From Octopus sinensis (lineage: Eukaryota), in the NCBI RefSeq assembly GCF_006345805.1, contig NC_043002.1, positions 93,186,001 through 93,250,000 of the forward strand: DNA of 64,000 bases. The letters are read 5' to 3'. Each line of letters opens with the position of its first letter. Within the stretch, counting starts at the first letter, position 1. Position numbers and translations under genes: made by a program. Under the pieces are notes generated by a model. That model was given only the letters and a program-made list of their open reading frames with translations, made no database searches and was not told the DNA's origin. Shown piece after piece: positions 2,344 through 64,000 of the stretch.

Positions 2344-2526
2344 GACATAGCTCGAGATTGTCTCCGCATTCAAAGCCTTCAGATGTTTGGAGATTATTTG
2401 TGTGGTATTGAAACCCCAATGCTATCTTTTGATGTTGAAACTAAATGTTACTCTTCAACAGAACCCAGTTTATTAATAGATGAAGCAGAACTTGAAATGA
2501 ATATTGAACAATATGTTACATCTGAG
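2344..2526 (+). CDS. SMG6: SMG6/EST1A coding exon (first in window; phase 0-0)
   Basis: Acceptor ttttcttcag|, donor |gtgagt. Encodes DIARDCLRIQSLQMFGDYLCGIETPMLSFDVETKCY...YVTSE (61 aa), resembling human SMG6 ..ADCKRVTVLKYFLEALCGQEEPLLAF.. upstream of the PIN domain (recalled sequence). Confidence 0.9.
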
Positions 2527-4274: not shown

Positions 4275-4403
4275 GATGAGGCTGTAATGGAAACGGAAGA
4301 GGATGATATTACTGATGGGGAAGAGATGAAGATGTTGAAAGCAAAGAAAGAAGAACTGAAAAAGAGAGTTGAGAAACAAAGCCGCCACCAACAGAATATC
4401 CAA
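4275..4403 (+). CDS. SMG6: SMG6 exon: acidic linker plus predicted helix (phase 0-0)
   Basis: Acceptor tttcatctag|, donor |gtaagt. Encodes DEAVMETEEDDITDGEEMKMLKAKKEELKKRVEKQSRHQQNIQ (43 aa), matching human ..EDDIRELRAKKLALARKIAEQQRRQEKIQ. Confidence 0.92.
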
Positions 4404-4613
4404 GTAAGTATATAAAGTGTAATCTTTCTCTTCCTCTTTTCTCCAGTGTCTTCTTGTCTTGCATGATTGACTTGGTCAGGTTGGTTAACTGTTGTAGTTG
4501 TTGCTGTAGGTGTTGTTGTTATTGTTGTTGTAGCTGTTGTATTTAGATTTCTTCTGTTGCCAAACTAAATATTATTTTATCACTACTGCTCCCCTTTATT
4601 TTCTTTGTGTGTG

Positions 4614-8272: not shown

Positions 8273-8848
8273 ATCTTCAAATACATGTACAGAAAAGAAA
8301 GATAGTTTAGATTCCTGTTTTCAGTTGTGGTTTTAGAATTGTTTTGAGGAACCAGTCAGTTCTTAAAGGTTTATTTTAAGATTTTCTATTGCGTTATTAT
8401 TTATTTTTATGTTTTTAGCCGTATCTTTGATCATATTTCTGTTGTAGAGGCAAGAGTTGTCTGCTTTTAGATTCTGATTGTCTTGCTCTGCAAATAAATA
8501 TTTTCTTCAGTAACCTGATGAGATAGCACAGTCTTCATTAAAGAGAAAAGTTACTTCAGATAGCATCAGACTGAAATAGCTACTCCACAATAAAACAATG
8601 GCTAAATGTGGCAAAAGCAATTGTGATCCTATTTTTGACATGGTGTACTTAATCATTAGCATGCTGCAAACAAATGTATGAATTGATCTGTTTTGAACTT
8701 GAAGTAAATCAATGGATTACTTGTAAATAAATATCTGTTGTTTGTAAAACCTTAAACTGCATGTTGTTTGCTTGCATGCTTCTTTTTTTTATGTAATTTT
8801 TGTCTTATCTGCACACTTATCACATCTGCTCCATCGTCATTTCCAAAG

Positions 8849-8920
8849 ATGTTGAGAGCCAAGAGAGATGAGCTCCAGCAGCAAGTTGATCAACAGGCCA
8901 GCCGTAAGCAGAACATCCAA
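8849..8920 (+). CDS. SMG6: Candidate alternative or duplicated SMG6 exon (72 nt, phase 0-0)
   Basis: Acceptor catttccaaag|, donor |gtcagt. Encodes MLRAKRDELQQQVDQQASRKQNIQ; 12/24 aa and 50/72 nt identical to the last 72 nt (4332-4403) of the preceding exon. Confidence 0.65.
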
Positions 8921-10841
8921 GTCAGTAACAATTTTGTTTTCTTATTCAGATTGAATGTCTGCTAACCCACTTTCCTTAGTTGTTTTTTTGTGTGAACTTT
9001 GTTTCTATTCTGATGTCTTCAATGTTATTTGAGCTAAATAACTAATATTGTTTTTTAATAACAGACATTTTCCTTGTAATTTTTTTTTCTAACGAACTTT
9101 ACTTAATCACCATCTTCACCATCACTCCACCATCATTCAGTTTGGTAAGTGTTTGTCAGAAAGTTGATATATAATACTTATTTGTATATTGTATGTTTAC
9201 AGCTCATTTCATCTAACAACAAAAGATTAAATCTTTTAAATAAAATTTCAAAGTCTGTTTCATTGAAACTGTTCTGACATACCTTACATTTGTACATTTT
9301 CCCCATTCTTTAATATGCTTCTTCTCCAAAGTAGCTATATTGCTAACCATTATCAATGTTGTACACTAGCTACTAGAACATATTGTATTGGACTTTGTTT
9401 TATAAAAAAAAGTCATGTAAAAAACAGAAGTAAACAAACTAAATTAACTGTAGCATCCAAGCAACACACCTAAAACTAACCTGGCATTTTTACCTTACTA
9501 AATATATCCTGTGATATTGAATACCAGTTCTTATTTTCTTAATAACTTTTATCATCAGATTTCATGACTGTTAATGATTCTTGTTATTTTACTTCTTTTT
9601 TTTTTAATTAATTATTCAACATGATGTAACAGTTGTAGGTGTTGCTGTTGTTTAAAATCAAAAAGTAAGCACTAACATTTTGCTCAGTTACTAATGTATG
9701 TAGTAAACTATGAAACGTTTATGATAAACACACCTGTCCTTTGGATGGTTTAAGTTGCTTTGGTGGTATTTTTTTCACCAAATAATTGAACTACCTTGAA
9801 GGTTTATGAGTAGCATGGTAATCTGTTTCCCATTAACCTAGGAACAGAAAATGAAATTGAAGGGGGTATTGTGGAAGTTGTTGCACTTTAGTGATCATAG
9901 TACATATAAGTTTGCAGGCAACGCAAAGTAGAGCTACTGAAGTGTTTTGGGAGTAGATTATGGATAATGACTACAAAATATAGTTGTTTTACATGAAAGC
10001 AAAATTTCCTGTCAGAAACAGCCACATAAATGGTGTAAGGAATTTGAAGGAAGATGTTGAAACTTCCCCTCTGCATCATCATCATTTAACATCCGCTTTC
10101 CATGCTAGCATGGGTTGGACAATTTTGACTGAGGGCTGGCGAACCAGATGGTTGCACGAGTCTCCAATCTTGATTTGGCAGAGTTTCTACAGCTGGATGC
10201 CCTTCCTAATGCCAACCACTCCGAGAGTGTAGTGGGTGCTTTTTACGTGCCACCAGCATGGGTGCCACCAGCACGGGTGCCACCGGTTTATTTTATTCAA
10301 CAGCAAAGCGAGCCATTTTTTTTTGAGAGACAAGCTAACAAAAGCCCCTTTATTTTGTCTTCCCACATAGCCTGCACATAAACTAACAGCAAATTCCACA
10401 TAAAGTTAAATTGGTATGGAGCTGTCTGAAAGATACGAATAACTTTTGCTAGTGGAAGCAAAACTCTTATTTAAAGGTTGATTCTTTGGGATGAATCGTA
10501 TGTGAATGTTTAAAAAGGGCTAAAACGACAATGCTAAAATGTATTTGGAACAATGGGCAACAGTTGAAATATCATAATGGATGGGTAAATAAGCATCCTT
10601 AAAGTGAAACAACGCATTGGTAGGTAAACAAAGGTATCAACAAATAGAAGAGAGGGAAAGGAACATCACCTTTCAAGTAATTCAGAATAGGTAAAGGTAA
10701 GCTTGCCAAAGTTTAATGCAGTTTAAATATGGAGAATAAGATAGTTTGGTATTCGATATTCATCATGTACTCTGTTCCTAGTCAACTGAATCACCAGTGG
10801 AAATAAATTAATAGACAAAGTTCTTTTACTTTTTTGAAAAG

Positions 10842-12214: not shown

Positions 12215-12648
12215 AGGGTGCCAGTGGGGTGTGCTAGTAGGGTGCCAAGAATACCATCCAATCGTGTGCTAGTAGGGTGCCAAGAACACCATCTGAGCGT
12301 GATCATTGCCAGAGCAGCCAACTGGCTTCCGTACCCATGGCACGTAAAAAGGGCACCATTCGAGTGTGATTGTTACCAACGTCACTTCACTGGACCTGTG
12401 TCGATGGCACGTGTAAAAAGATTTGAGCAAGGTCATTGCCAGTACCGCCTGACTGGCCCCGTGCAGGTGGCACGTAAAAAGCACCCATTACATTCTCGGA
12501 GTGGTTGGCGTTAGGAAGGTCATCCAGCTGTAGAAACTCTGCCAGATCAAGACTGGAGCCTGGTGCAGCCATCTGGTTGCCAGCCCTCAGTCAAAACCGT
12601 CCAACCCATGCTAGCATGGAAAACGGATGTTAAATGATGATGATAATG
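12215..12648 (+). mobile_element. (TGA)n-tailed retroposon with internal GGCACGTAAAAAGCAC tandem units
   Basis: Ends ..CCAACCCATGCTAGCATGGAAAACGGATGTTAAATGATGATG. Other sense copies at about 43290-43662 and 50960-51325. Confidence 0.8.
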
Positions 12649-16020: not shown

Positions 16021-17247
16021 TCAGGTCATCCCATAAGTTCTGTTCGATTTTACCTTTTTTAAAATTGAATGAAATTTAATAGTATTTTAGAATGTCTAAT
16101 GGGATTAAAAATTATTTTTATGCATTTGTGTACATTTAAACTAATTAAATATTATTTTACAGAATAATAGAATTAAAATTTCTTTGATTAAAACCCTTTC
16201 TAACGTGGAAGTATCCAAAGAGCATTTGAGGCACATAATACTTTGAGTACAAAATAAGAAACTCTGCAGCCAAAGCGACTCGAAACATACACTCAGGTTA
16301 TGGGAAAGAATGCTTGAATGAAAGAACTTGCAGAAGATGGTTTGCAAAATTCAGAAGTGGAGATTTCAGCCTTGAAGATTAAGATCAAACAAGACATCCA
16401 GTTGAGTTTGATGATAAGCTTCTTGTAGCATTACTTGAAGAAAATCCTGCATTATCTGTTGAAGAATTGGCAATAAAGCTTAGTTCAAACTATACAACTG
16501 TTCATCGTCATCTTCAACAACTTGGAAAGGTTCCTAAACTTGGAAAATGAGTGCCTCATGATTTGTCTGAAAGCAACTGCAAATCCCGAGTTGACATCTG
16601 CTTTTCTCTCCATTCTTGCAAACTCATTTAACCATTTTTGGATAGACTTGTGACTGGTGATGAAAAATGGATCTTCTATCAAAATGTTAAATGTCATAAA
16701 CAGTGGCTTGGTAAAAGGGAAAAAGCTCAACCACAACCGAGAAGGGAACTTCATGGGGAAAAGGTTCTCTCTATCTGGTGGGATTGCAAAGGAGTAATTC
16801 ACTTGGAATTGTTACCACCTAATGCAACAATCAATGCTCAAGTCTACTGTCAGCAATTAGAACGTCTGAACCAAGTTTTGAAGAAAAAAAGACCCGCTTT
16901 AGTGAATCAAAAAGGTGTAATGTTTCATCAGGACAATGCGCGACTCCACACTGCAAATATCACATCACAGAAGATCGAAGAGCTTGGTTGGGGAAAAATT
17001 CCTCATCCACCTTATTCTCCCGACCTTGCTCCTTCAGACTACTATTTGTTTCATAGTTTACAGAATCATTTGGGGGGCATAACTTTTGCAAGCCAGGAGG
17101 AGGTCAAAACTGACATTTCAGAGTTCTTCACTTTGAAACCAAAAACGTTTTACATTGATGGGATTAAAAAACTTGTAAATAGATGGAAGGAAGTCATAGA
17201 TAATCAGGGAAAGTACATTGATGATTAAATTTCAATTAAATATAACA

Positions 17248-17533: not shown

Positions 17534-17684
17534 GCTCTCTTGCGCAAACAGAGAAACTGTTGTATTGAGATTGAAATCCAACCTGTATACCTTGTGCCAG
17601 ATACCAACTGCTTCATTGATCATCTGCTTGGTTTACAGAAACTAATTTTTAGTGAAAATTACACTATCTCCGTTCCACTAATTG
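17534..17684 (+). CDS. SMG6: SMG6 exon, PIN domain start (phase 0-1)
   Basis: Acceptor tcatttcag|, donor |gtgagt. Encodes ALLRKQRNCCIEIEIQPVYLVPDTNCFIDHLLGLQKLIFSENYTISVPLI, including the VPDTN catalytic Asp motif. Confidence 0.97.
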
Positions 17685-19950
17685 GTGAGTACATGCTGTA
17701 CCGTTACAGCCAGTTGTTACATAAATACTAGTTGTTTATTTACTGTAGAATTAAATAAACCAATGAATTTGATTGAAAGTGCCTTCCCTTTCCTTCTTAA
17801 ATCTGAAATTTAGAACATGAATGAAGATGAAATATATAGCTTAACAGCACAATTTAATTCGTTAGAGCACTGAACTAGCTTCTCTTTATGAATGTACTTG
17901 TTTGTTTTACATTTGTGCCGGGTTCATCATCGTCAGTGTTTTACATGCATTTATCTATGCTGATATGGGTTGGACAATTTTTCTGAGGCAATGTTTTATG
18001 GTCACACACCTTGTCTGTTGCTAGCTTTTTAGTCACCTGTTTGAACATGCAAGGAACCCAGTGTACATGCAACATATTCTCTATGCTGTAATCAAAGGTG
18101 ATCTTTCAGTGAATTTGATCTCTTGTAAAAGTGATCCCAACTAAATGGATTAGTCTTTAACACATGTAATGTTATAGTTTTTATGCTATTGTTTATAATG
18201 AGATATTTGCTGTACTAATCTACCCTAACACTGCTAAAGTGTTTTACTATTGGTCATAGGCATTGGTGTGGCTGTGTGGTAAAAAGTGTGCTTCTCAACC
18301 ACATGGTTCTGGGTTCAGTACCAACTGCATGGCATGGCACGTTGGGCAAGCGTCCTCTACTATAGCCAAAGGTCAACTAAAGCTTTGTGAGTGAATTTGG
18401 TAGACAGAAACTGAAACAAGTCCATTGTGTATATATATATGCACATACACACACGTGTGTGTGTGTGTTTATCTTGACAACTTGTGTTGGGTTGTTAATG
18501 TCCCCATAACTTAGCAGTTCAGCAAAAGTAACCAATAGAATAAGTACCAGTCTTTAAAAAAAAAAAGTACTGGAGTCAATTTTTTTGTGACTAAACCTTC
18601 AGTCACAAGTGAAACAATTGAAAAATAAAAGATAAAGATAGGAGGCTCTTGACTTGCTACTATAATTGTTGTGTGCACTATTAATAATTTATGTATTTAT
18701 CAATATGTTATACTTCCACTAAAACACTGAAGATGCACATCTTTAATGGTGTCTTGGCAGTAAACTCTTTTTCTTGAAGCAACATATAGATGTTCATTAT
18801 TAAGCCTTTAGCACTTAAACTGGTCATAACTGGCCCAAACATCCTACCCATTTTATGTTCAAACTGGCCAGATCCAACCTCTCGTACTTAGCCTACAACA
18901 TCACTGTGAAAATAAACAATCAAATCGTTGATTAATTCAAAACAAGGGTTAAGCATTATGATGTTTTGCTTTAAAATCTGTTTTCCCCTCGTTACCTGGA
19001 AAAGATACTTCTGTGTGTGACTATGTTTGTTTGTTTGTTTACAGAAAAAGAAACCTATGTTACCAGCTGAGGTGGAAGTCTACTTCAAATTTCTTTCCTT
19101 CTACTCATATTCTCTCTCTCTCTCCAATAGATGCAGACATGACTGTGATTAAGAAGCTTATTTTGTAATCACATGGTTTTTTAGTTAGTTGCACTGCATC
19201 GCACTTTGGGCAAGTGTCTTTCTTCTATTATAGCCCTGGGCTGGCCAAAACCTTGTGAGTGTATTTGGTAGACAAATTGAAAGAAGTCTGTCGTGTGTAT
19301 GTGTGTGTGTCTCTTTGTCTTTACATTGTACCATAGTTGTAAATGTTGTATGAGTAGTATGGCTTTGTTTCCACTTTTTAGTAGTGCAAGCATGCCTAGC
19401 CATGGGGGGGGGGGATGAGGGTTAGTGAAAGGAATGGCATCCAGCCATAGTAAATTTGCCTCAACAAATTCCATCTAACCCATAAAGGATGGAAAAGTGG
19501 ATGTTAAAATGACAATGATCACACGCTCATTAACGCACACAAACACACACATACACACATTGTGTTTCTCAGTTTTTAGAATTGTACCCTGAGTCCTTTT
19601 AAAACATTATGAAGCAACAAAAAAAAAAAAAAGGTTGGCATCAGGTGGAACATCCCACTATGAAACACTGCCTTAAAAAGCCTCATCCAACTTATGATGA
19701 TAATGGTAGTGGTGGTGATAGCAATGGAGAGGAGAGAGAGACAGTATAACTGATATACTATAGCCCTCACTTGCTTTACTTACAGCTGTAATTATGACAC
19801 ATAACTTACTAAGTCACAAATTTCCTCCTACTTTGAATGAATGGTCTTAGCAATTTAAAATCACCAACTGAAGACTGTTCCCACTGTTAGTTGTTCCTGT
19901 GAATTTGATGCAACAAACATAATGACTCTCTGTATGTTAAAAAAAATTTT

Positions 19951-20360
19951 GGATCTTTTCGGTTTGAACTGCCGTTTTTAACATAATTTCTAGGTAATTA
20001 AAAAATTTTAAACTTCGTATACTGGTAGAATGTGTTTATAAAACATCTTTTTCTCTTGACTTTATTCAGAAAATTCTATAGTTTGTAAGATATTTGTTGT
20101 TTTTTTCTTCAATTTCTGCAATTTCAACCAATCACTGACGTCCATTGAGGTAAAAAAACATTCTGTGCCGTATGAATATGTCCCTCGTTTAAGAAACAGA
20201 TTGGGTTTATTTACATTTGTGAAGAAAAAAAGATACCCTTCCCCCACCCCTAACCCTAACACAGATTGAAATGCAATAGATCGATACTAGGGTCATAATT
20301 ATGGGTGACAATTTCATATGACAACGCTAGAAAAAACTGCTGTTCAAACCGAAAAGATCC
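19951..20360. mobile_element. MITE with GGATC..GATCC TIRs, copy 1
   Basis: TIR ggatcttttcggtttgaactgccgttttt / aaaaactgctgttcaaaccgaaaagatcc; flanks aaaatttt/aaattttt (7 of 8 match); homologous to 49855-50258. Confidence 0.85.
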
Positions 20361-20659
20361 AAATTTTTTTATATATCAACTATTTGAAAATAATGTATTT
20401 TAACAAACGGCTACTTTTCTTCTGTTGTTTTTATGGATACTGCTAGCAACAGCTAAGCAATTTCTTTGATCCTAACTTAATCTAAATGCAGATTGATTCA
20501 GCAATGAGAACTGTGTCTCTCTCTCTCTTTTTTACTTTATCTCAGTTAAACTCAAAAAAGAACACTGACATGGCAAGTACTCCCTAATTTCCTGAGCTTC
20601 TGTGGTTTGACTCCGCTGAGAGTTGCTTTCATAAGATTACCTGGGATTGTATGCTTAAC

Positions 20660-21537: not shown

Positions 21538-21749
21538 TAATTAATGAGTTGGATGGCTTAGTCCGTGGTAACTTAGAAGGTCATTATGAATCAATTGAAC
21601 ACAGTGACATGGTGAAGGAAAATGCAAGGTTGGCCATGACATTTCTTGAGCAGCAATTTGAACAGAAAAACCCCCATCTAAGAGCTCAGACAACTAAAGG
21701 CACCATGCTTCAAACAATTCTCTATCGTAGTGAAGCTACTGACACTAAG
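21538..21749 (+). CDS. SMG6: SMG6 exon, PIN domain (phase 1-0)
   Basis: Acceptor ttcattgcag|, donor |gtaaat. Encodes (V)INELDGLVRG...ARLAMTFLEQQFEQKNPHLRAQTTKG...YRSEATDTK, matching human VINELDGLAKG..FLEQRFE..LRALTSRG. Confidence 0.97.
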
Positions 21750-22899: not shown

Positions 22900-22981
22900 G
22901 GAAACAATGATGACCTGATTCTTACCTGTTGCCTTCACTATTGCAAAGACACTACTAAAGATTTCATTCCAAAAGGGAAAG
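22900..22981 (+). CDS. SMG6: SMG6 exon, PIN domain (phase 0-1)
   Basis: Acceptor ttccttcag|, donor |gtttga. Encodes GNNDDLILTCCLHYCKDTTKDFIPKGK, matching human GNNDDLILSCCLHYCKD. Confidence 0.97.
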
Positions 22982-25843: not shown

Positions 25844-25974
25844 ATGAGCCTAACCGCATTTACCGTGATGTAGTCCTTCTCACTGATGATCGTAATTTAC
25901 GCCTGAAAGCCCACACTTACAATGTTCCTGTGAAGGATGTTCCCAGCTTCCTCAAGTGGTGTAAAGTAACATGA
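25844..25974 (+). CDS. SMG6: SMG6 last coding exon with stop codon
   Basis: Acceptor tgttattcag|. Encodes (D)EPNRIYRDVVLLTDDRNLRLKAHTYNVPVKDVPSFLKWCKVT*, with TGA at 25972-25974. The six core exons sum to 888 nt in one continuous frame. Confidence 0.97.
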
Positions 25975-31737: not shown

Positions 31738-32129
31738 TATATGAATAAATGAAAAGAATGAGGCGAACGAAGATTTTAACAATATTCCTTTACTTTCGAC
31801 ACATGTTTCGAAGACTGCATATTCTTAATTCCGAAGGAATAAAGTGTGCATTATTAATACTTCCTCCTTCCAACCAATTTTGACGTCATTGCTAATAACG
31901 GATAATTTTAAAAAAAAACACTCATTATCACTGTGGACACAATGTAGGCAGTCATCAAAAAGCTTTTGTTCGTCGTGAGACTGATAGAGGCTCCTTGTCT
32001 TTCCTGAAGAGAAGACGGCATAATGCACACTTTATTCCTTCGGAATTAAGAATATGCAGTCTTCGAAACATGTGTCGAAAGTAAAGGAATTTTGTTAAAA
32101 TCTTCGTTCGACTCCATTCTTTTCATTTA

Positions 32130-32137
<8 letters not shown>
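31738..32137. mobile_element. Inverted-repeat element, probably Penelope-like pLTR with a truncated inverted copy
   Basis: Arms of about 117 bp (31738-31854 and 32020-32137), nearly identical, with a 165-bp spacer. Contains the hammerhead and ends in (TA)n. Confidence 0.6.
31992..32088 (+). ncRNA. Type I hammerhead ribozyme (Penelope-like/retrozyme type)
   Basis: Stem I 31992-32003/32077-32088; CUGAAGA 32004-32010; stem II 32011-32022/32053-32064; GAAA 32065-32068; stem III AC-AUGU-GU; GUC triplet with predicted cleavage after 32076. Confidence 0.85.
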
Positions 32138-32168
<31 letters not shown>

Positions 32169-32191
32169 ATATATATATATATATGTATGTG

Positions 32192-32222
<31 letters not shown>

Positions 32223-32340
32223 ATATATGTATGTATGTATGTGTGTGTATATATATATATATATATGTATATGTGTATATATATCTATATCTATATGTAT
32301 GTATGTATGTATATATCTATATCTATATGTATGTATGTAG

Positions 32341-32371
<31 letters not shown>

Positions 32372-32826
32372 TATATCTATATGTATGTATATGTATGTAT
32401 ATATATATATGTATGTATATGTATGTGTATATATATATATCTATATGTATGTGTATATATATATATATATGTATGTGTATATATATATATCTATATGTAT
32501 GTGTATATATATATATATGTATGTGTATATATATATATATGTATGTGTATATTATATATCTATATGTATGTGTATATATATAATCTATATGTGTATGTGT
32601 ATATATATATATCTATATGTATGTGTATATATATATATGTATGTGTATATATATATATCTATATGTATGTGTATATATATATATGTATGTATATATATAT
32701 ATATGTATGTATATATATATATATCTATATGTATGTGTATATTATATATATATATATATATATGTATGTGTATATATATATATATGTATGTATATATGTA
32801 TGTATGTATATATATATACATGTATG

Positions 32827-32877
<51 letters not shown>
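32131..32877. repeat. Compound (TA)/(TG)/(TC) micro/minisatellite, about 750 bp
   Basis: Recurrent units such as atatatatat(ct)atatgtatgtgt. Confidence 0.97.
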
Positions 32878-35343
32878 ACCTGCTGTTGTAACAGAGTATT
32901 GATTCCAATAGGTTAAATGATGCTGTGAAAATTGAAACTTCTTGAGATATTTAATTTATTTAGTTATTGCAGTCTCTTGGAGGTGAAAGAAGCTGTTTTA
33001 TTATTGCTTTTTGGGAAGGGGGTAGGGCTTGTCTCATTTGTTGAAATAGAGGTTTGCAAAGCAAGCCCTTAATTAAAAGGTGTAACAAAAGGTGTGATGC
33101 CAAAATGCCTTTTTATCTATAACTGCCAAGTATTTTCTATTCAGAAGCTTCCTCGAATTAACTAGAGTTAATTTTTTATTCGCTTTCTATAAAAATTTGC
33201 TGTGCTATTGTATGTTGAAGCACTCTCTTCTCCGTCTTTTGCATACAGACACTTCAAAAACCCAATACTATGTCCCCCCAACTTTTAAATGTCATATAAG
33301 CCCATACTGTCCCTTCTGATGAGTCTGTTGAACTGCCATTCTCTCAAAGCACTAATTTACCAAACTGCCATGTTTTTATTTATTTAATATTTTGAGTTTT
33401 TGCGGGGTTTTTTTTTCTTTAATGCCAAAATATAATTCCTTCCATAAATGTTTCTTTTATTTCTTTTTGAAACAAAATTCTTACATGGCTATGATCTCTG
33501 TACTTATGAAGAATTATTCATACACACACACACACACACAAACATACTCTTACATACACATATACACATGTGCATGTGTACAATGAAGTTGCTTGCATAT
33601 AAGGAAGGCAATTTGATAAATTGCCAGCCTCACTTAGAATTACTTACAATCAGAAGTTGATTGGAATTATATGCTAATTTCGTGTAATGCCATAAACATG
33701 ACAAAGATTTTTAAAAAGTGGGTTTGCTATTAAAACCCTTTTTAAAACTTGCTTCACAGATGATGATTGTTTCAATAGTTACTGTGTCATCACAGTAATA
33801 GGTTAGTTTCTACAAACAATGACATCATTATATAAAATAGGCATTTACTAACTTGATTCCTTACTAAAGAGCTGGTCTCTTTAATAATAATAATAATAAT
33901 AATGATGATGATGACTACCTACCAAGTTTTGTTCCTTTCTATTCTTGTGCTATTGAACTACGAAATAATAATAGTGTGATTTTGATGAATTAATTACTAT
34001 AGGTTTACATTAATTAGCTTTTGATTTCTATTGATTGATTCCAGCTAGACTCAGACAATTCTTTGATATTTCTATCACACATTTCCCCACCCACTTTATG
34101 AATTTATATATTTTTTTTTAAATTTGTGATTTGATTAAAAAAGTAATAAAAGAATGTAATGTTTTCTTTTTCCTTTTCATTCTGTTTTTTTTTGTTTTTT
34201 TTTTAATATTTAATTTCATTGTGTGTTGGAGAAAGCTTTAAATGGGACTGCTGAGTTGGATATGATATCAAGGGAATGTTTGTATATCAGCAGCCCCTGA
34301 AGTAGAATTAAACACTGATTAAATGGCTCCTTGAATTTCAGAAAAACACTAATCTGACATCATCATCGTCATCATCATTTAATGTCCACTTTTCCATGCT
34401 TGCATGGGCTGAATGAAATTTGTTGAGACAGATTTTCTACAGCTTCTTGTCTCTTCTTGTCAGCAACCCTCACCTGTTCCCCAGTGAAGTAATATTCCCC
34501 ACAACCAAACATGTTTACACAGAAGATTGGGAATGAAGGACCCCTTTGCATGACAGTCACATTTGTTTACAACTGTTACATGAAGCCAAGGCAAGGAAAC
34601 AGTAACACACACATACACACACACATGCACATACACATGATATGTACATATATGGAGTGGCCCTTTTTTAATTTTCATCTACCAAGTCCACTCACAAAGC
34701 CCCAGGTGGCCTAGGGCTATAGAAGAAGACACTTGCCGAAGTTGCCACACAATGGGACTGAACTTGAGATCATGTGGTTGGCAAGCAATTTTTATCACAC
34801 AGCTATGCCTAGGCCTATATATTTATGTAATTAGAATATAGAACATTGTTTAAGATATTTTGGTTGAATAAGTAACCAGAATGTCTGTTAATTGCTTTTC
34901 ACATTGTTTTATATTCTCTAATTACACATCTTGTTAGCTGAGAAATTGTAATACCTCTTTGTACCATGATATATCCTGACATCACCACCATCTTCTCTCC
35001 TTTTCCATCTGGGGTAGCTATGAATCTCCTCAGCAAAATACTTGTCCCTATCCCTAAATCATACTCTTGCCTCTCAACACCTGGTATAAGCCACCTCCCT
35101 CAATATTACACCCACCTCAGTCAAGGGGTCTTGTTTTGAGAGCAACTTAGTGACCTCACTACTGCCAGTGACATGAAAAAGTACCCAGTTTACTCTGCAA
35201 AGTGGTTTGATGACAGGAAGGGCATCCTGCCACAGAAATTATGCCAAAAAAGACATTGGAAGCTCACATAGTCCTCTGTCCTGCTTGATCCTATCAAACT
35301 GTCCATCTCATACTATTTGATGATGATGATATATCATGTGAAG

Positions 35344-38166: not shown

Positions 38167-38545
38167 TTCATCATCGTTTAACATCCACTTTCCATGTTAG
38201 CATGGGTTGGACGGTTCAACTGGGGTCTGGGAAGCCAGGAGGCTGCACCAGGCCCAGTCTGATCTGGCAGTGTTTCTACAGCTGGATGCCCTTCCTAACG
38301 CCAACCACTCCGTAAGTGTAGTGAGTGCTTTTTACATGCCAGGCGAGGCTGGCAACGGCCACGATCTGTTGGTGCTTTTTATGTGCCACCGGCACGGAGG
38401 CCAGTCGGGGCAGTGCTGGCAAAGGCCATGTTCGGATGGTTCTTTTATGTGCCACCAGCACTGGTACCACAACTACAATTTCCATTGATTTTTGAGCGAT
38501 TTCGATTTCGATTCCAATTTCACTTGCCTCAACAGGTCTTCGTGG
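38167..38545 (-). mobile_element. (TGA)n-tailed retroposon, antisense
   Basis: Starts catcatcgtttaacatccactttccatg. Same family at about 10075-10287, 39249-39700, 44813-45165, 50444-50670 and 63581-63775. Confidence 0.8.
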
Positions 38546-43210: not shown

Positions 43211-44039
43211 TCACAGCCATGCATGTCCAGCCCAGTTAAGAGTATCCCTGATGCGTTAGGCAATATAATATGCTTGAGAAGACCTGCTGAGTCAAGTAAA
43301 ACCAATATCATAAGCTGTGGCCAGTACCTCCTGACTGGCTTCCATGCTGGTGGCACGTAAAAAGCACTATCCGAATGTGGCTGATGCCAGTACTCCTTGA
43401 CTGGCCCCATACCGGTGGTATGTAAAAAGCACTATCCAAACATGGCCAATGCCAGGCCCACCTGATTGGCTCCTGTGCTGGTGGCACATAAGAAACTCCC
43501 ACTACACTCTCAGAGTGGTTGGCATTAGGAGGGGCATCTAGCTGTAGAAACATTGCCAGATCAGATTGGATCGTGGTGCAGCCATTTGCTCTCCAGACCT
43601 CAGTGAAATCGTCCAACCCATGCCAGCATGGAAAATGGACGTTAAACGATGACGATGATGATGATATATATATATACATACACATGCACATAACATTATT
43701 GATCCCTTAGCTTTTAACACCAATCACCCACCATATTTATTATTAATAGTAAATAATAGCATATTTTCATTAAATAGCTCATTAGCTCATGCCAATAAAA
43801 ATTTTCTGGTAATTTTTGTTTCCTATATGTTAGAGTTTTTTCTCTTTTAAGTGATTGCAATGCATGAGCTATAAAGCTTCATCTTATTAAAGAACACACA
43901 AATATGTGTCTGTATCATTTTATTCCCTTCTACCACCCACCCTTTTCTTCTACCACTTCTATGAAGGATATACATGTCTCCTTCCCCTCACAATTCATTA
44001 CCAGCTCTCACTAGTGTATAAGTATGATGTAGTGTGTGC

Positions 44040-44589: not shown

Positions 44590-45945
44590 CTTCCCGTCAA
44601 GTCTACAACCTCAGAACTGCTACAATGATAGGTAGGTCTACTAAAATTGTTGAAATGCAAGAATAGAGACATGCAGATGTGTCCTATGTGCAAGAAGTAA
44701 GATGGAGGGAAGCTTCAGTCAGACTCTTCATGGACCAGGAACAAAGTAAAGTATATTTGTAATGGTAACAGTGATATTATGGGTAATGTATGCATACTCC
44801 TTACAGAGAAATCATCATCATCATCATCATCATCATCGTTTAGCAACGCTTTCCATGCTGGCATGGGTTGGACGGTTCAACTGGGGTCTGGGAAGCCAGA
44901 AGGCTGCACCAGGCCCATCTGGCAATGTTTCTACGGCTGGATGCCCTTTCTAACACCAACCACTCCATGAGTGTAGTGGGTGCTTTTTATGTGCCACTGG
45001 CACAGGTGCCAGATGAGGCTGGCAAACGGCTACAATCGGATGGTGCTTTTTACGTGCCACCGGCACGGAGGTCAGTCGGGGTGGCGCTGGTAAAGGCCAC
45101 ATTCGAATGGTTCTTTTATGTGCCACCGGCACTGGTATCACAGCTACAATTTCCATTGATGTTGATCAATAAAGTCATTGAAGTAGTCAAAGTGTTTGAT
45201 AGTATTAGCTAAAGCTAATCTTTGATAAGTCAACACAAACATTTATCTCTGCATCTGGTCCACAAGCTGGACTGGCGGATGAACTGTGTTCTATGAGGTC
45301 CTTTTGCAGGTTAGCTCAATGACAAATAACAACGGCCTTATTATCATTGCTTGTGAATTCAAAGTCATGTTGGGCAGCACTTCAGTGGTGTACATAGAGA
45401 TTCTAGAACTGAGGAAAGAAGAAGGGTGCTGGAGTTCTGTGATGCAGATGACTTGTTGATCTGCAATACTTACTTCACCTGATCACCTATTATTCTGGTC
45501 ATTTCACAGCCATATTAACTACATTTTCATCAGAAATAGGGATATATAGATGCTTGTGAAAGCAAATTCATGCCCTGGTGAAGCAAGTACAACCCAACAT
45601 AAGTTAGTGGTTCAGATTTCGGGCTAGAAGGACTCAGAGACACAAGCCAGTTTGGGAAAGGAAGATACGAAAAATTAAAGATCCATTGAGTGGTTAGAAA
45701 TTTAGAAAAGTAGTAGTTGAAATATTTGATGAAAAAGAAGAGGAGATAAAAATATATAGCATAAAAGGCAACTGGAATTCCTTATGAGACAACCTGCTGA
45801 GGAGTAAAGACCAAATGTGTGACTGGTACAAAGTCCCAGCCAGATTGAGGGTGATGTGGTGGTAGAATAGTGACAGACAGTCATAACAGTGAAAATTAGG
45901 ATTGGAAAGACTGGAAAATGGGAGTAGAAGAGAATTGTATCAGGA
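44590..45945 (+). mobile_element. RTE LINE AP-endonuclease remnant interrupted by a SINE
   Basis: Fragments VQEVRWR, GNVCILLTEK, KVIEVVKV, GPQAGLADE, LEFCDADDLLICNTYF. SINE inserted at about 44813-45165. Confidence 0.75.
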
Positions 45946-48155: not shown

Positions 48156-48256
48156 TAGTGAAAGACCAATGTGATTAAAACTCCAGCTAGGCATTCATGC
48201 TGCATTATTTGACTGGGATATCAGGTATGGAAAAGGTGCATTGGTCCAGGCAAGCC

Positions 48257-48320
<64 letters not shown>

Positions 48321-48324
48321 TGAT
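48257..48324. repeat. (GAC)n trinucleotide microsatellite
   Basis: Nearly pure GAC run with GAT interruptions. Confidence 0.95.
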
Positions 48325-48519
48325 GTTGTAAATTCTTATTATTATACTTCACTACACTTTAATTTATTATCTATTTATTTTTCTTCAGATTTTAAATCAT
48401 AGATTTTATTGAGTAAAACAGGAATTCGGTAAAGAATTTTGTTTAGTAAGCATTATTTATACAAACTGTATCCGAATTTCAGATATTTACATGAAAGAGT
48501 CAATATTTAAACTACTGTC

Positions 48520-62893: not shown

Positions 62894-64000
62894 ATTGTGT
62901 AAAACTTGATAGAGATTTTGTTGAAATGGATAATTTTATTATTTACTAGCTTGTAACCAAAGCAACACCCCCACTTTTCCACTTCCTCATTCTCAGACAA
63001 AGGGCAAATGTTCAAAATGTTAGTGTTCACTTTTTATAATAGTTTTATTTACTGAACTCTCTTATTAATGTATATATGTCCACTGGTCATAATTGTATTT
63101 ACATGACTAATAACATGAGGTATGTTTATGAAAAATTTTAGATTTTATTTAGTCATTATTCTGGCTTTATTAATAAGAATTTCCAATAGCACAGACTTTC
63201 TATTATAGAAGTGCACTGAAATTGACTCGTGAATGTAAGATGAGATGGTGTCTCGATGCACAGGTGTAAAATGTTACACTTCATAATTTTGAAGGTTTTG
63301 AACTGACATAGATTTGGAAGAGACTACAAATAAGACAGTTTGAAAGGTAATACCTGTAAACAAATGAATTGACATGAAAAGTTCAAAACATTTTCATGTT
63401 ATCAACACTAACGCATCTACAAATGTTAGTTTTAAGTATACATGCAATATACCTTAGATTCATAATCATGTTGTCCTCTAAATATCAAGGTCATTGTATG
63501 TCTCACTATGTGTCTGTAATTTGGCAACAAGCTCTTGGTAAAGTTCATTAAAAGCATCAGATCATACCCCCACTCCCATATCATCATCATCATCGTTTAG
63601 TGTCCGCTTTCCATGCTGACATGGGTTGGACGGTGCAACTGGGGTCTGGGAAGCCAGAAGGCTGCACCAGGCCCAGTCTGATCTGGCAATGTTTCTACGG
63701 CTGGATGCCCTTCCTAACGCCAACCACTCCATGAGTGTAGTGGGTGCTTTTTACGTGCCACCTGCACAGGTGCCATATAGATTCATTAATTTCATACAGA
63801 CAATTTCTAAAAGTTAACTTTATAGTCATCAATAATTAGCCTACACAGAAAACAAAATTTAAAGCTCTCAAAAATTTGATGTTGCTTTTCTAATGTTTTT
63901 TTTTTTCATATTAATGGGATTTGAACAGTTTTACAAATAATAACGTTTTCAAGAATTGTTGGAGTAACCAACTTGATGGTTTACTATATCTAATTCAGTT

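What the first reader, a model, noticed from the sequence alone, without database searches (positions are those of the whole stretch)
8849..8920. Hidden duplicated SMG6 exon just upstream of the PIN nuclease domain
Seen: inside the 13-kb intron is a 72-nt segment, AG|MLRAKRDELQQQVDQQASRKQNIQ|GTCAGT. It is paralogous to the last 24 codons of the exon at 4275-4403 (MLKAKKEELKKRVEKQSRHQQNIQ|GTAAGT), with 50/72 nt and 12/24 aa identical. Five of the 12 identical residues use different synonymous codons, there are two K/R and two E/D swaps, no stop or indel, and the same donor position and phase. Inference: this pattern suggests purifying selection. If mutually exclusive, the isoform would lose the 19-aa acidic linker and carry a less charged, Gln-rich helix. 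If additive, it would tandemly duplicate the helix before the PIN domain. I know of no described exon duplication at this position in SMG6.
Basis: partly seen in the sequence, partly recalled or inferred. Interest (0 to 1): 0.78.

Follow-up and report, generated by a model that had tools for sequence, protein, structure and literature searches.

The report
Annotated duplicated cassette exon in octopus SMG6
The 72-base segment is a real exon of the octopus SMG6 gene, copied long ago from part of the neighbouring exon and kept in octopuses and cuttlefish, but it is already in public gene models, where it is added after the original exon and does not replace it.

Summary

The segment is a genuine exon, but it is not hidden. 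The window is Octopus sinensis CM016864.1 (100% identity). RefSeq isoforms X1 and X3 already contain ...QNIQ|MLRAKRDELQQQVDQQASRKQNIQ|ALLRKQ..., and X2 lacks exactly these 24 residues.

The same 72-nt exon lies in the same intron in O. bimaculoides, Argonauta hians and Sepia pharaonis.
- Both splice sites are conserved, including an AG acceptor and an unusual GTCAGTA donor.
- The intron flanks next to the exon are conserved.
- dN/dS between orthologues is 0.07-0.18.

Mytilus has only a 144-nt intron at this position, and more than 200 other metazoan SMG6 proteins carry one copy. The duplication therefore looks coleoid-specific and old.

All gene models that include the exon also keep the parent exon, so the additive reading is supported and the mutually exclusive reading is not. 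AlphaFold2 predicts that inclusion lengthens the single alpha-helix before the PIN domain from about 38 to about 60 residues.

The duplicated unit equals human SMG6 1204-1227. That stretch carries L1205, K1208 and L1212, residues of the predicted helix contact with SMG5, and both copies keep them. No RNA junction evidence could be reached here. Interest is modest.

The parts
8849..8920 (+). 72-nt (24-codon, phase 0-0) cassette exon of SMG6 encoding MLRAKRDELQQQVDQQASRKQNIQ. It is a partial tandem duplicate of 4332-4403.
   Evidence: Searches give the sequence. Searches show it in O. sinensis RefSeq isoforms X1 and X3 and absent from X2. Searches show orthologues in O. bimaculoides, Argonauta and Sepia with dN/dS 0.07-0.18.
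8799..8848 (+). Conserved upstream intron flank holding the pyrimidine-rich tract and the AG acceptor (...catctgctccatcgtcatttccaaAG).
   Evidence: Searches give the alignment and flank print-out. One search gives 38/50 matched positions between O. sinensis and Sepia, against 13/50 for the parent exon's flank and a maximum of 33 for random 50-mers.
8921..8950 (+). Donor site GTCAGTA (C at +3, off the GTRAGT consensus) and the conserved downstream flank.
   Evidence: One search shows GTCAGTA identical in all four cephalopods. One search gives 24/30 between O. sinensis and Sepia.
8758..8778 (+). Two TGCATG hexamers (8758-8763 and 8773-8778), which match the Rbfox-type motif, at 76-91 nt upstream of the cassette exon.
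   Evidence: One search finds TGCATG within 56-126 nt upstream of the exon in all four species, against 0.6-1.1 per kb across the intron. Any regulatory role is inference only.
4275..4403 (+). Constitutive parent exon (43 codons). It encodes a 19-aa acidic stretch plus the 24-aa helix unit (4332-4403) that was duplicated.
   Evidence: It is present in all SMG6 models read.
2344..2526 (+). Upstream SMG6 exon (DIARDCLRIQ...YVTSE).
17534..17684 (+). Next exon. It encodes the end of the PIN-preceding helix (ALLRKQRN) and the start of the PIN domain (IEIEIQPVYLVPDTN...).
21538..21749 (+). PIN domain exon (VINELDGL...).
22900..22981 (+). PIN domain exon (GNNDDLILTCCLHYCKD...).
25844..25974 (+). Last coding exon of SMG6, up to and including the TGA stop.

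Best explanation
Window 8849-8920 is a functional, frame-preserving cassette exon of Octopus sinensis SMG6 (EST1A), the endonuclease of nonsense-mediated mRNA decay.

Origin. It arose by tandem duplication of the last 72 nt, plus the donor site, of the exon now at 4275-4403. A pre-existing AAG just before the ATG became its acceptor. The duplication happened before octopods and decapodiforms (cuttlefish and squids) split, and after the cephalopod lineage left other molluscs.

Splicing. When included, the exon is spliced in after the parent exon. The protein then carries two consecutive 24-residue copies of the helix unit directly before the PIN nuclease domain. When skipped, the protein has the ancestral single copy.

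Predicted structure. Inclusion is predicted to lengthen one continuous alpha-helix by about 24 residues.

Inferred function. The unit corresponds to human SMG6 1204-1227. In the human protein this is the part of the PIN-preceding helix predicted to pair with the equivalent helix of SMG5 when the composite SMG5-SMG6 nuclease forms. Both octopus copies keep the three residues mutated in the published interface mutant. The most likely effect of inclusion is therefore twofold. A less charged, Gln-rich copy of the SMG5-contact segment would sit next to the PIN domain. The TPR-like, phospho-UPF1-binding domain would be pushed about 35 A further away. Together these would tune assembly or geometry of the nuclease without switching it off.

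Shown: the exon, its conservation, its selection, and its additive inclusion in gene models. Inferred: regulated skipping, the helix extension, and any effect on SMG5 binding.
For: - Locus identity: window 1-26974 is 100% identical to O. sinensis CM016864.1.
- Annotation: RefSeq X1 (1548 aa) and X3 contain the peptide between the products of 4275-4403 and 17534-17684. X2 (1524 aa) is shorter by exactly 24 residues.
- Other models with both copies: O. bimaculoides A0A0L8HCQ7 and XP_014773450.1, and Sepia pharaonis CAE1322979.1.
- Genomic orthologues in the same intron, all 72 nt: L009:65538-65609, L003:31096-31167 and L002:19570-19641.
- Splice sites: the AG acceptor and GTCAGTA donor are identical in all four species. 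Proximal flanks are conserved above random.
- Selection between orthologues: dN/dS 0.07-0.18, with Fisher p from 2e-4 to 4e-3.
- Orthology: each copy is closer to its positional counterpart across species than to its paralogue (57 versus 46 nt for the new exon, 52 versus 49 nt for the parent).
- Absence outside cephalopods: the Mytilus intron at this position is 144 nt with no second copy. Among 257 collected proteins, only the cephalopod ones show a second helix unit. Pecten, Babylonia, Tegillarca, Lymnaea, Mytilus and Saccostrea have one.
- Structure: AlphaFold2 predicts helix 77-136 with the exon and helix 75-112 without it, at pLDDT about 86-97.
- Human mapping: the unit equals human 1204-1227. 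L1205, K1208 and L1212 fall on unit positions 2, 5 and 9, which are L, K and L in both copies. The numbering was validated on 14 residues named in the paper. PMC12923823 describes the helix contact and the moderate NMD defect of that mutant.
Against: - No RNA-seq or cDNA junction could be inspected, so inclusion and skipping rest on gene models. Some of those may be ab initio or propagated by homology.
- Newer models skip the exon (O. bimaculoides XP_052824838.1, O. vulgaris CAI9723978.1, Argonauta GAB1608422.1). The inclusion level could therefore be low or tissue-restricted.
- The AlphaFold2 alignment has no homologues covering the insert, so the helix there rests on one sequence.
- The SMG5 contact is extrapolated from AlphaFold models and mutants of the human proteins. 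Octopus SMG5 was not examined.
Confidence: 0.8

Rival explanations
1. The exon is one of a mutually exclusive pair. Either 4275-4403 or 8849-8920 is used, and the isoform with only the new exon loses the 19-aa acidic stretch.
For: Both exons are phase 0-0, so a 2526>8849 junction would keep the reading frame. Exon pairs derived from tandem duplication are often mutually exclusive (PMC8373072 and PMC6071210, listed).
Against: None of the nine cephalopod models read has the new exon without the parent exon. Five have both in tandem. The exons differ in length (129 versus 72 nt), and the 4445-nt intron between them poses no steric block. No competing RNA structure was looked for.
Confidence: 0.05
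2. The exon is constitutive in vivo, and the exon-skipping models (X2 and others) are annotation noise.
For: Conservation and selection are as strong as for the neighbouring constitutive exon. Three independent annotations include it.
Against: Four independent models skip it: O. sinensis X2, O. bimaculoides XP_052824838.1, O. vulgaris and Argonauta. The donor has a conserved non-consensus C at +3, and the intron flanks are more conserved than those of the parent exon. Both are features typical of regulated alternative exons.
Confidence: 0.12
3. The segment is a decaying pseudo-exon. Gene predictors include it only because it happens to be open and flanked by AG and GT.
For: The paralogue comparison alone is compatible with neutral decay in 4-12% of simulations.
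Against: The segment is intact, at the same length and with the same splice sites, in four genomes spanning the octopod-decapodiform split. dN/dS is 0.07-0.18, while the surrounding intron cannot be aligned.
Confidence: 0.03

Closest known systems
Alternative exons derived from tandem exon duplication (the class reviewed in PMC8373072 and PMC6071210)
   Same: The new exon is a neighbouring, same-strand, same-phase copy of an exon, retained under selection and used in alternative isoforms.
   Different: Only the 3' 72 nt of a 129-nt exon were copied. The copy is added after the parent exon as a cassette, creating an internal protein repeat. The better-known cases are homologous substitutions through mutually exclusive splicing.
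[quoted passage not shown]
   Same: The 24-residue unit aligns to human 1204-1227. It keeps L1205, K1208 and L1212 and the terminal IQ, and the next exon keeps the V1229/L1230 position as LL. It is predicted helical and leads straight into the PIN domain.
   Different: Humans and all other non-cephalopod animals examined have one unit. Coleoids can have two in a row.
Poison exons and other NMD-coupled autoregulatory splicing in NMD-factor genes
   Same: It is an alternative exon inside a gene of the NMD pathway.
   Different: The exon has no stop codon and its length is a multiple of three, so it changes the protein. It does not send the transcript to decay.

Membership tests
SMG6 / EST1A gene | C-terminal PIN nuclease domain with the catalytic acidic residues | tested here: met
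   The Pfam PF13638 domain is precomputed on the hits. The sequence matches the human SMG6 PIN structures 2DOK and 2HWW at E = 5e-63 from residue 139 on. The PDTN and other motifs are present.
SMG6 / EST1A gene | EST1 / 14-3-3-like TPR domain upstream in the same protein | tested here: met
   It lies outside the window. The full O. sinensis gene that contains the window carries PF10374 and PF10373.
Exon derived from tandem exon duplication | Significant similarity to a neighbouring exon of the same gene on the same strand | tested here: met
   50/72 nt against a background maximum of 37/72. The similarity is limited to the coding part plus the donor site.
Exon derived from tandem exon duplication | Same reading phase and usable splice sites | tested here: met
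   Phase 0-0, with an AG acceptor and a GT donor conserved in four species.
Cassette (skipped) exon | Transcripts both with and without the exon, other exons unchanged | tested here: inconclusive
   This is met at the level of gene models: O. sinensis X1 versus X2 differ by exactly these 24 residues. RNA reads could not be examined with these tools.
Mutually exclusive exon pair | Exactly one of the two exons in every transcript, never both | tested here: not met
   Five cephalopod gene models contain both exons in tandem, and none has the new exon alone.
Mutually exclusive exon pair | Near-equal exon length, so that the encoded segments are interchangeable | tested here: not met
   129 nt versus 72 nt.
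Poison exon (NMD-triggering) | An in-frame stop codon or a frameshift on inclusion | tested here: not met
   72 nt with no stop.

The most novel reading that the evidence does not exclude
Coleoid cephalopods may regulate inclusion of this exon, possibly through the conserved upstream UGCAUG motifs, for example in neural tissue. Inclusion would switch SMG6 between a form with the ancestral SMG5-contact helix and a form with an extended, Gln-rich one. NMD endonuclease activity would then be tuned by tissue. That would be a lineage-specific layer of RNA-surveillance control in animals already known for unusual RNA biology.
Probability: 0.15. Interest if true: 0.55.

Novelty: already known. Interest (0 to 1): 0.28.

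Why it matters
As a sequence feature the exon adds nothing new. It is already in RefSeq and UniProt models of three cephalopods.

Three things appear not to have been described in the searchable literature:
- The exon is a partial copy of its neighbour.
- The copy is restricted to coleoids, among the animals sampled.
- The copied unit coincides with the segment of the PIN-preceding helix that a 2026 study implicates in SMG5-SMG6 composite nuclease formation.

If inclusion changes SMG5 binding or nuclease geometry, coleoids would supply a natural length variant of that helix. Such a variant could be used to test the composite-PIN model. Otherwise this is an ordinary example of exon duplication feeding alternative splicing.

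Tried and rejected
- Word-indexed protein searches. Queries of 145 aa and 319 aa returned no cephalopod protein, because that tool returned only hits of roughly 0.55-1.75 times the query length. The exhaustive representative search and a full-length query solved this.
- Transcript evidence in Logan assemblies. P0002 is a genomic open reading frame from a 2.9-kb contig whose PIN exon is identical to Sepia pharaonis. P0256 and P0257 are genomic contigs carrying the large N-terminal exon, not mRNA. The window's own PIN-exon reading frame is not on record. No RNA junction evidence was obtained.
- Two-branch codon simulation of neutral versus constrained evolution.
- Tests on the paralogue pair alone. 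Differences fall 7/5/10 over codon positions by my own count, and the neutral-decay simulation is. These are suggestive but cannot separate selection on the new copy from selection on the parent copy.
- Further copies. None was found in the window or in the orthologous loci.
- Literature. Searches for SMG6 with 'cephalopod' or with 'octopus' found nothing.

Full report
**Observation**

The segment is exactly as described. Window 8849-8920 is preceded by AG and followed by GTCAGT, and it encodes MLRAKRDELQQQVDQQASRKQNIQ. The last 24 codons of exon 4275-4403 encode MLKAKKEELKKRVEKQSRHQQNIQ and are followed by GTAAGT.

The pair shares 50/72 nt and 12/24 aa. Five identical residues use different codons. 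There are two K/R and two E/D swaps, no stop, and the same donor position and phase.

The match is far above chance. Scanning either 72-mer ungapped over both strands of the window gives a mean of about 19 matches (sd 4) and a best unrelated score of 37. Local alignment limits the similarity to AAG + 72 nt + GT[A/C]AGTA, at 4329-4411 versus 8846-8928. Further flanks are at background.

**Gene context**

All exons are on the + strand. They are 2344-2526, 4275-4403, 17534-17684, 21538-21749, 22900-22981 and 25844-25974. Together they encode the C-terminal part of SMG6/EST1A, ending in the PIN domain. That domain matches the human SMG6 PIN structures 2DOK and 2HWW at E = 5e-63, from 11 residues after the end of the candidate exon. 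The intron holding the candidate is 13,130 nt long.

**What the paralogue pair alone can show**

Nei-Gojobori counts give Sd 8.5 over 12 synonymous sites and Nd 13.5 over 60 non-synonymous sites, with a one-sided Fisher p of 0.005. The parent copy is itself constrained, which biases this test.

A simple simulation applied 22 random substitutions to the parent sequence. It still gave a stop-free copy with at least 12 identical residues in 4-12% of trials.

**Related sequences**

The exhaustive protein search returned two cephalopod SMG6 proteins.
- Argonauta hians (P0115) has the single ancestral helix.
- Sepia pharaonis CAE1322979.1 (P0116) reads ...KMLRAKKEELKKKVEAKTLHQQNIQ|MLRAKREQLQKEVEQQTNRRQNIQ|AILQEH..., with both units in tandem.

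A full-length query then found the Octopus cluster.
- O. sinensis isoform X1 (XP_036360055.1, 1548 aa) and X3 (XP_029637408.2) contain exactly the window's 24 residues between ...SRHQQNIQ and ALLRKQ....
- Isoform X2 (XP_036360056.1, 1524 aa) lacks exactly these 24 residues.
- O. bimaculoides A0A0L8HCQ7 and XP_014773450.1 include the unit, with one substitution.
- O. bimaculoides XP_052824838.1 and O. vulgaris CAI9723978.1 skip it.

The window itself is 100% identical over 26,974 nt to O. sinensis CM016864.1. The exon is therefore already annotated at this very locus and is not hidden. No model has the new exon without the parent exon.

**Conservation and selection**

The orthologous 72-nt segment lies in the same intron in three further genomes: O. 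bimaculoides (L009:65538-65609), Argonauta (L003:31096-31167) and Sepia (L002:19570-19641). All four species have an AG acceptor and the identical donor GTCAGTA. The C at +3 departs from the GTRAGT consensus.

Between O. sinensis and Sepia the exon is 57/72 nt identical. The 50 nt upstream match at 38 positions and the 30 nt downstream at 24. The parent exon's flanks score 13/50 and 19/30, and random intronic 50-mers score 15 ± 9 with a maximum of 33.

Pairwise dN/dS between orthologous copies of the new exon is 0.07-0.18, with Fisher p between 2e-4 and 4e-3. Each copy is closer to its positional orthologue than to its paralogue. The duplication therefore predates the octopod-decapodiform split.

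Outside cephalopods there is one unit.
- The Mytilus intron at this position is only 144 nt.
- Among 257 collected proteins, only the cephalopod ones give a second hit to the unit. The second-best score is 88-116 for them and at most 44 for all others.
- Pecten, Babylonia, Tegillarca, Lymnaea, Mytilus and Saccostrea are among the single-copy molluscs.

**How it probably works**

AlphaFold2 predicts one continuous helix at residues 77-136 in the inclusion isoform and 75-112 in the skipping isoform. Confidence is high, and the helix leads straight into the first PIN strand. The acidic stretch before it is predicted to be disordered. Inclusion would thus lengthen a single helix by about 24 residues.

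PMC12923823 reports that human SMG6 and SMG5 each have an alpha-helix preceding their PIN domains. Contacts between these helices are predicted to stabilise the composite SMG5-SMG6 PIN unit. The SMG6 mutant L1205A/K1208D/L1212D targets that predicted coiled-coil interface and moderately impairs NMD.

I mapped the unit using a baboon sequence. Its human numbering reproduces 14 residues named in the paper. The 24-residue unit equals human 1204-1227, and the three mutated residues fall on unit positions 2, 5 and 9. Those positions are L, K and L in both copies in all four cephalopods. V1229/L1230 correspond to the LL at the start of the next exon.

My inference is that the cassette-encoded, less charged and Gln-rich copy takes the PIN-proximal place in the inclusion isoform. 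The ancestral copy and the TPR-like domain would be moved away by about six helical turns. This would modulate assembly or geometry of the nuclease without abolishing it. No experiment here bears on that inference.

A possible regulatory element was seen. TGCATG hexamers lie 56-126 nt upstream of the exon in all four species, against 0.6-1.1 per kb across the intron.

**Comparison and verdict**

This is a cassette exon derived from a partial tandem exon duplication, which is a well-known kind of event (PMC8373072 and PMC6071210, listed). It fails the defining features of a mutually exclusive pair and of a poison exon.

The exon is already in public annotation. Its origin and its coincidence with the SMG5-contact helix were not found in the literature.

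The main gap is direct RNA evidence. Neither the protein collections nor the Logan contigs reachable here contained spliced cephalopod SMG6 transcripts.

Interest is modest. The finding is a well-supported, already-annotated exon with a plausible but untested functional angle.

Noticed in passing
window 16638-17228 (+): An open 196-aa mariner-type transposase fragment lies in the same SMG6 intron, about 300 nt upstream of the first PIN exon. It matches Pfam Transposase_1 at E = 2e-25.
   Followed up: partly
window 8758-8763 and 8773-8778; also L009, L003 and L002 upstream of the orthologous exon: TGCATG (Rbfox-type) hexamers lie 56-126 nt upstream of the cassette exon in all four cephalopods. 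This may be a conserved splicing-regulatory element.
   Followed up: partly
window 10148-10381, 12387-12572, 38207-38488, 43308-43691, 44868-45212, 63626-63817 (both strands): A dispersed repeat family gives similar pseudo-ORFs (...FLQLDALPNANHS...VGAFYVPPA...) many times in the window. The old O. bimaculoides model A0A0L8HCQ7 carries a similar peptide (FYNWMPFLTPATPRV...) inside SMG6. This is probably a repeat wrongly taken as an exon.
   Followed up: no
window 19942-20366: A repeat of about 430 nt has 92-94% identical copies elsewhere in the same SMG6 gene, at L008 61325-61757 and 35153-35564. It looks like a young interspersed element.
   Followed up: no
window 32092-32916 and 48197-48402: There is a long TA/CA-rich microsatellite tract of about 0.8 kb. 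A separate trinucleotide repeat reads as poly-Asp, poly-Thr or poly-Arg depending on frame.
   Followed up: no
outside the window: O. sinensis isoform X3 versus X1 (P0251 versus P0250): A second alternative event removes 25 residues (KSSSRYPSAGPPKLRKYQFETMPREY) in the N-terminal half of SMG6. The O. vulgaris model has the same short form.
   Followed up: no
L002 (Sepia pharaonis), model CAE1322979.1: The Sepia model is N-terminally truncated. It also skips the exon encoding VRLYKDK...TVDK that is present in the octopod proteins. The model is likely incomplete.
   Followed up: no
window 4332-4403 versus 8849-8920, codons 15-20: A gapped alignment with a compensating 1-nt deletion and insertion 6 nt apart aligns the SR dipeptides of the two copies (KQ-SRHQ versus QQASRK-). 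This may be an old compensated frameshift.
   Followed up: no
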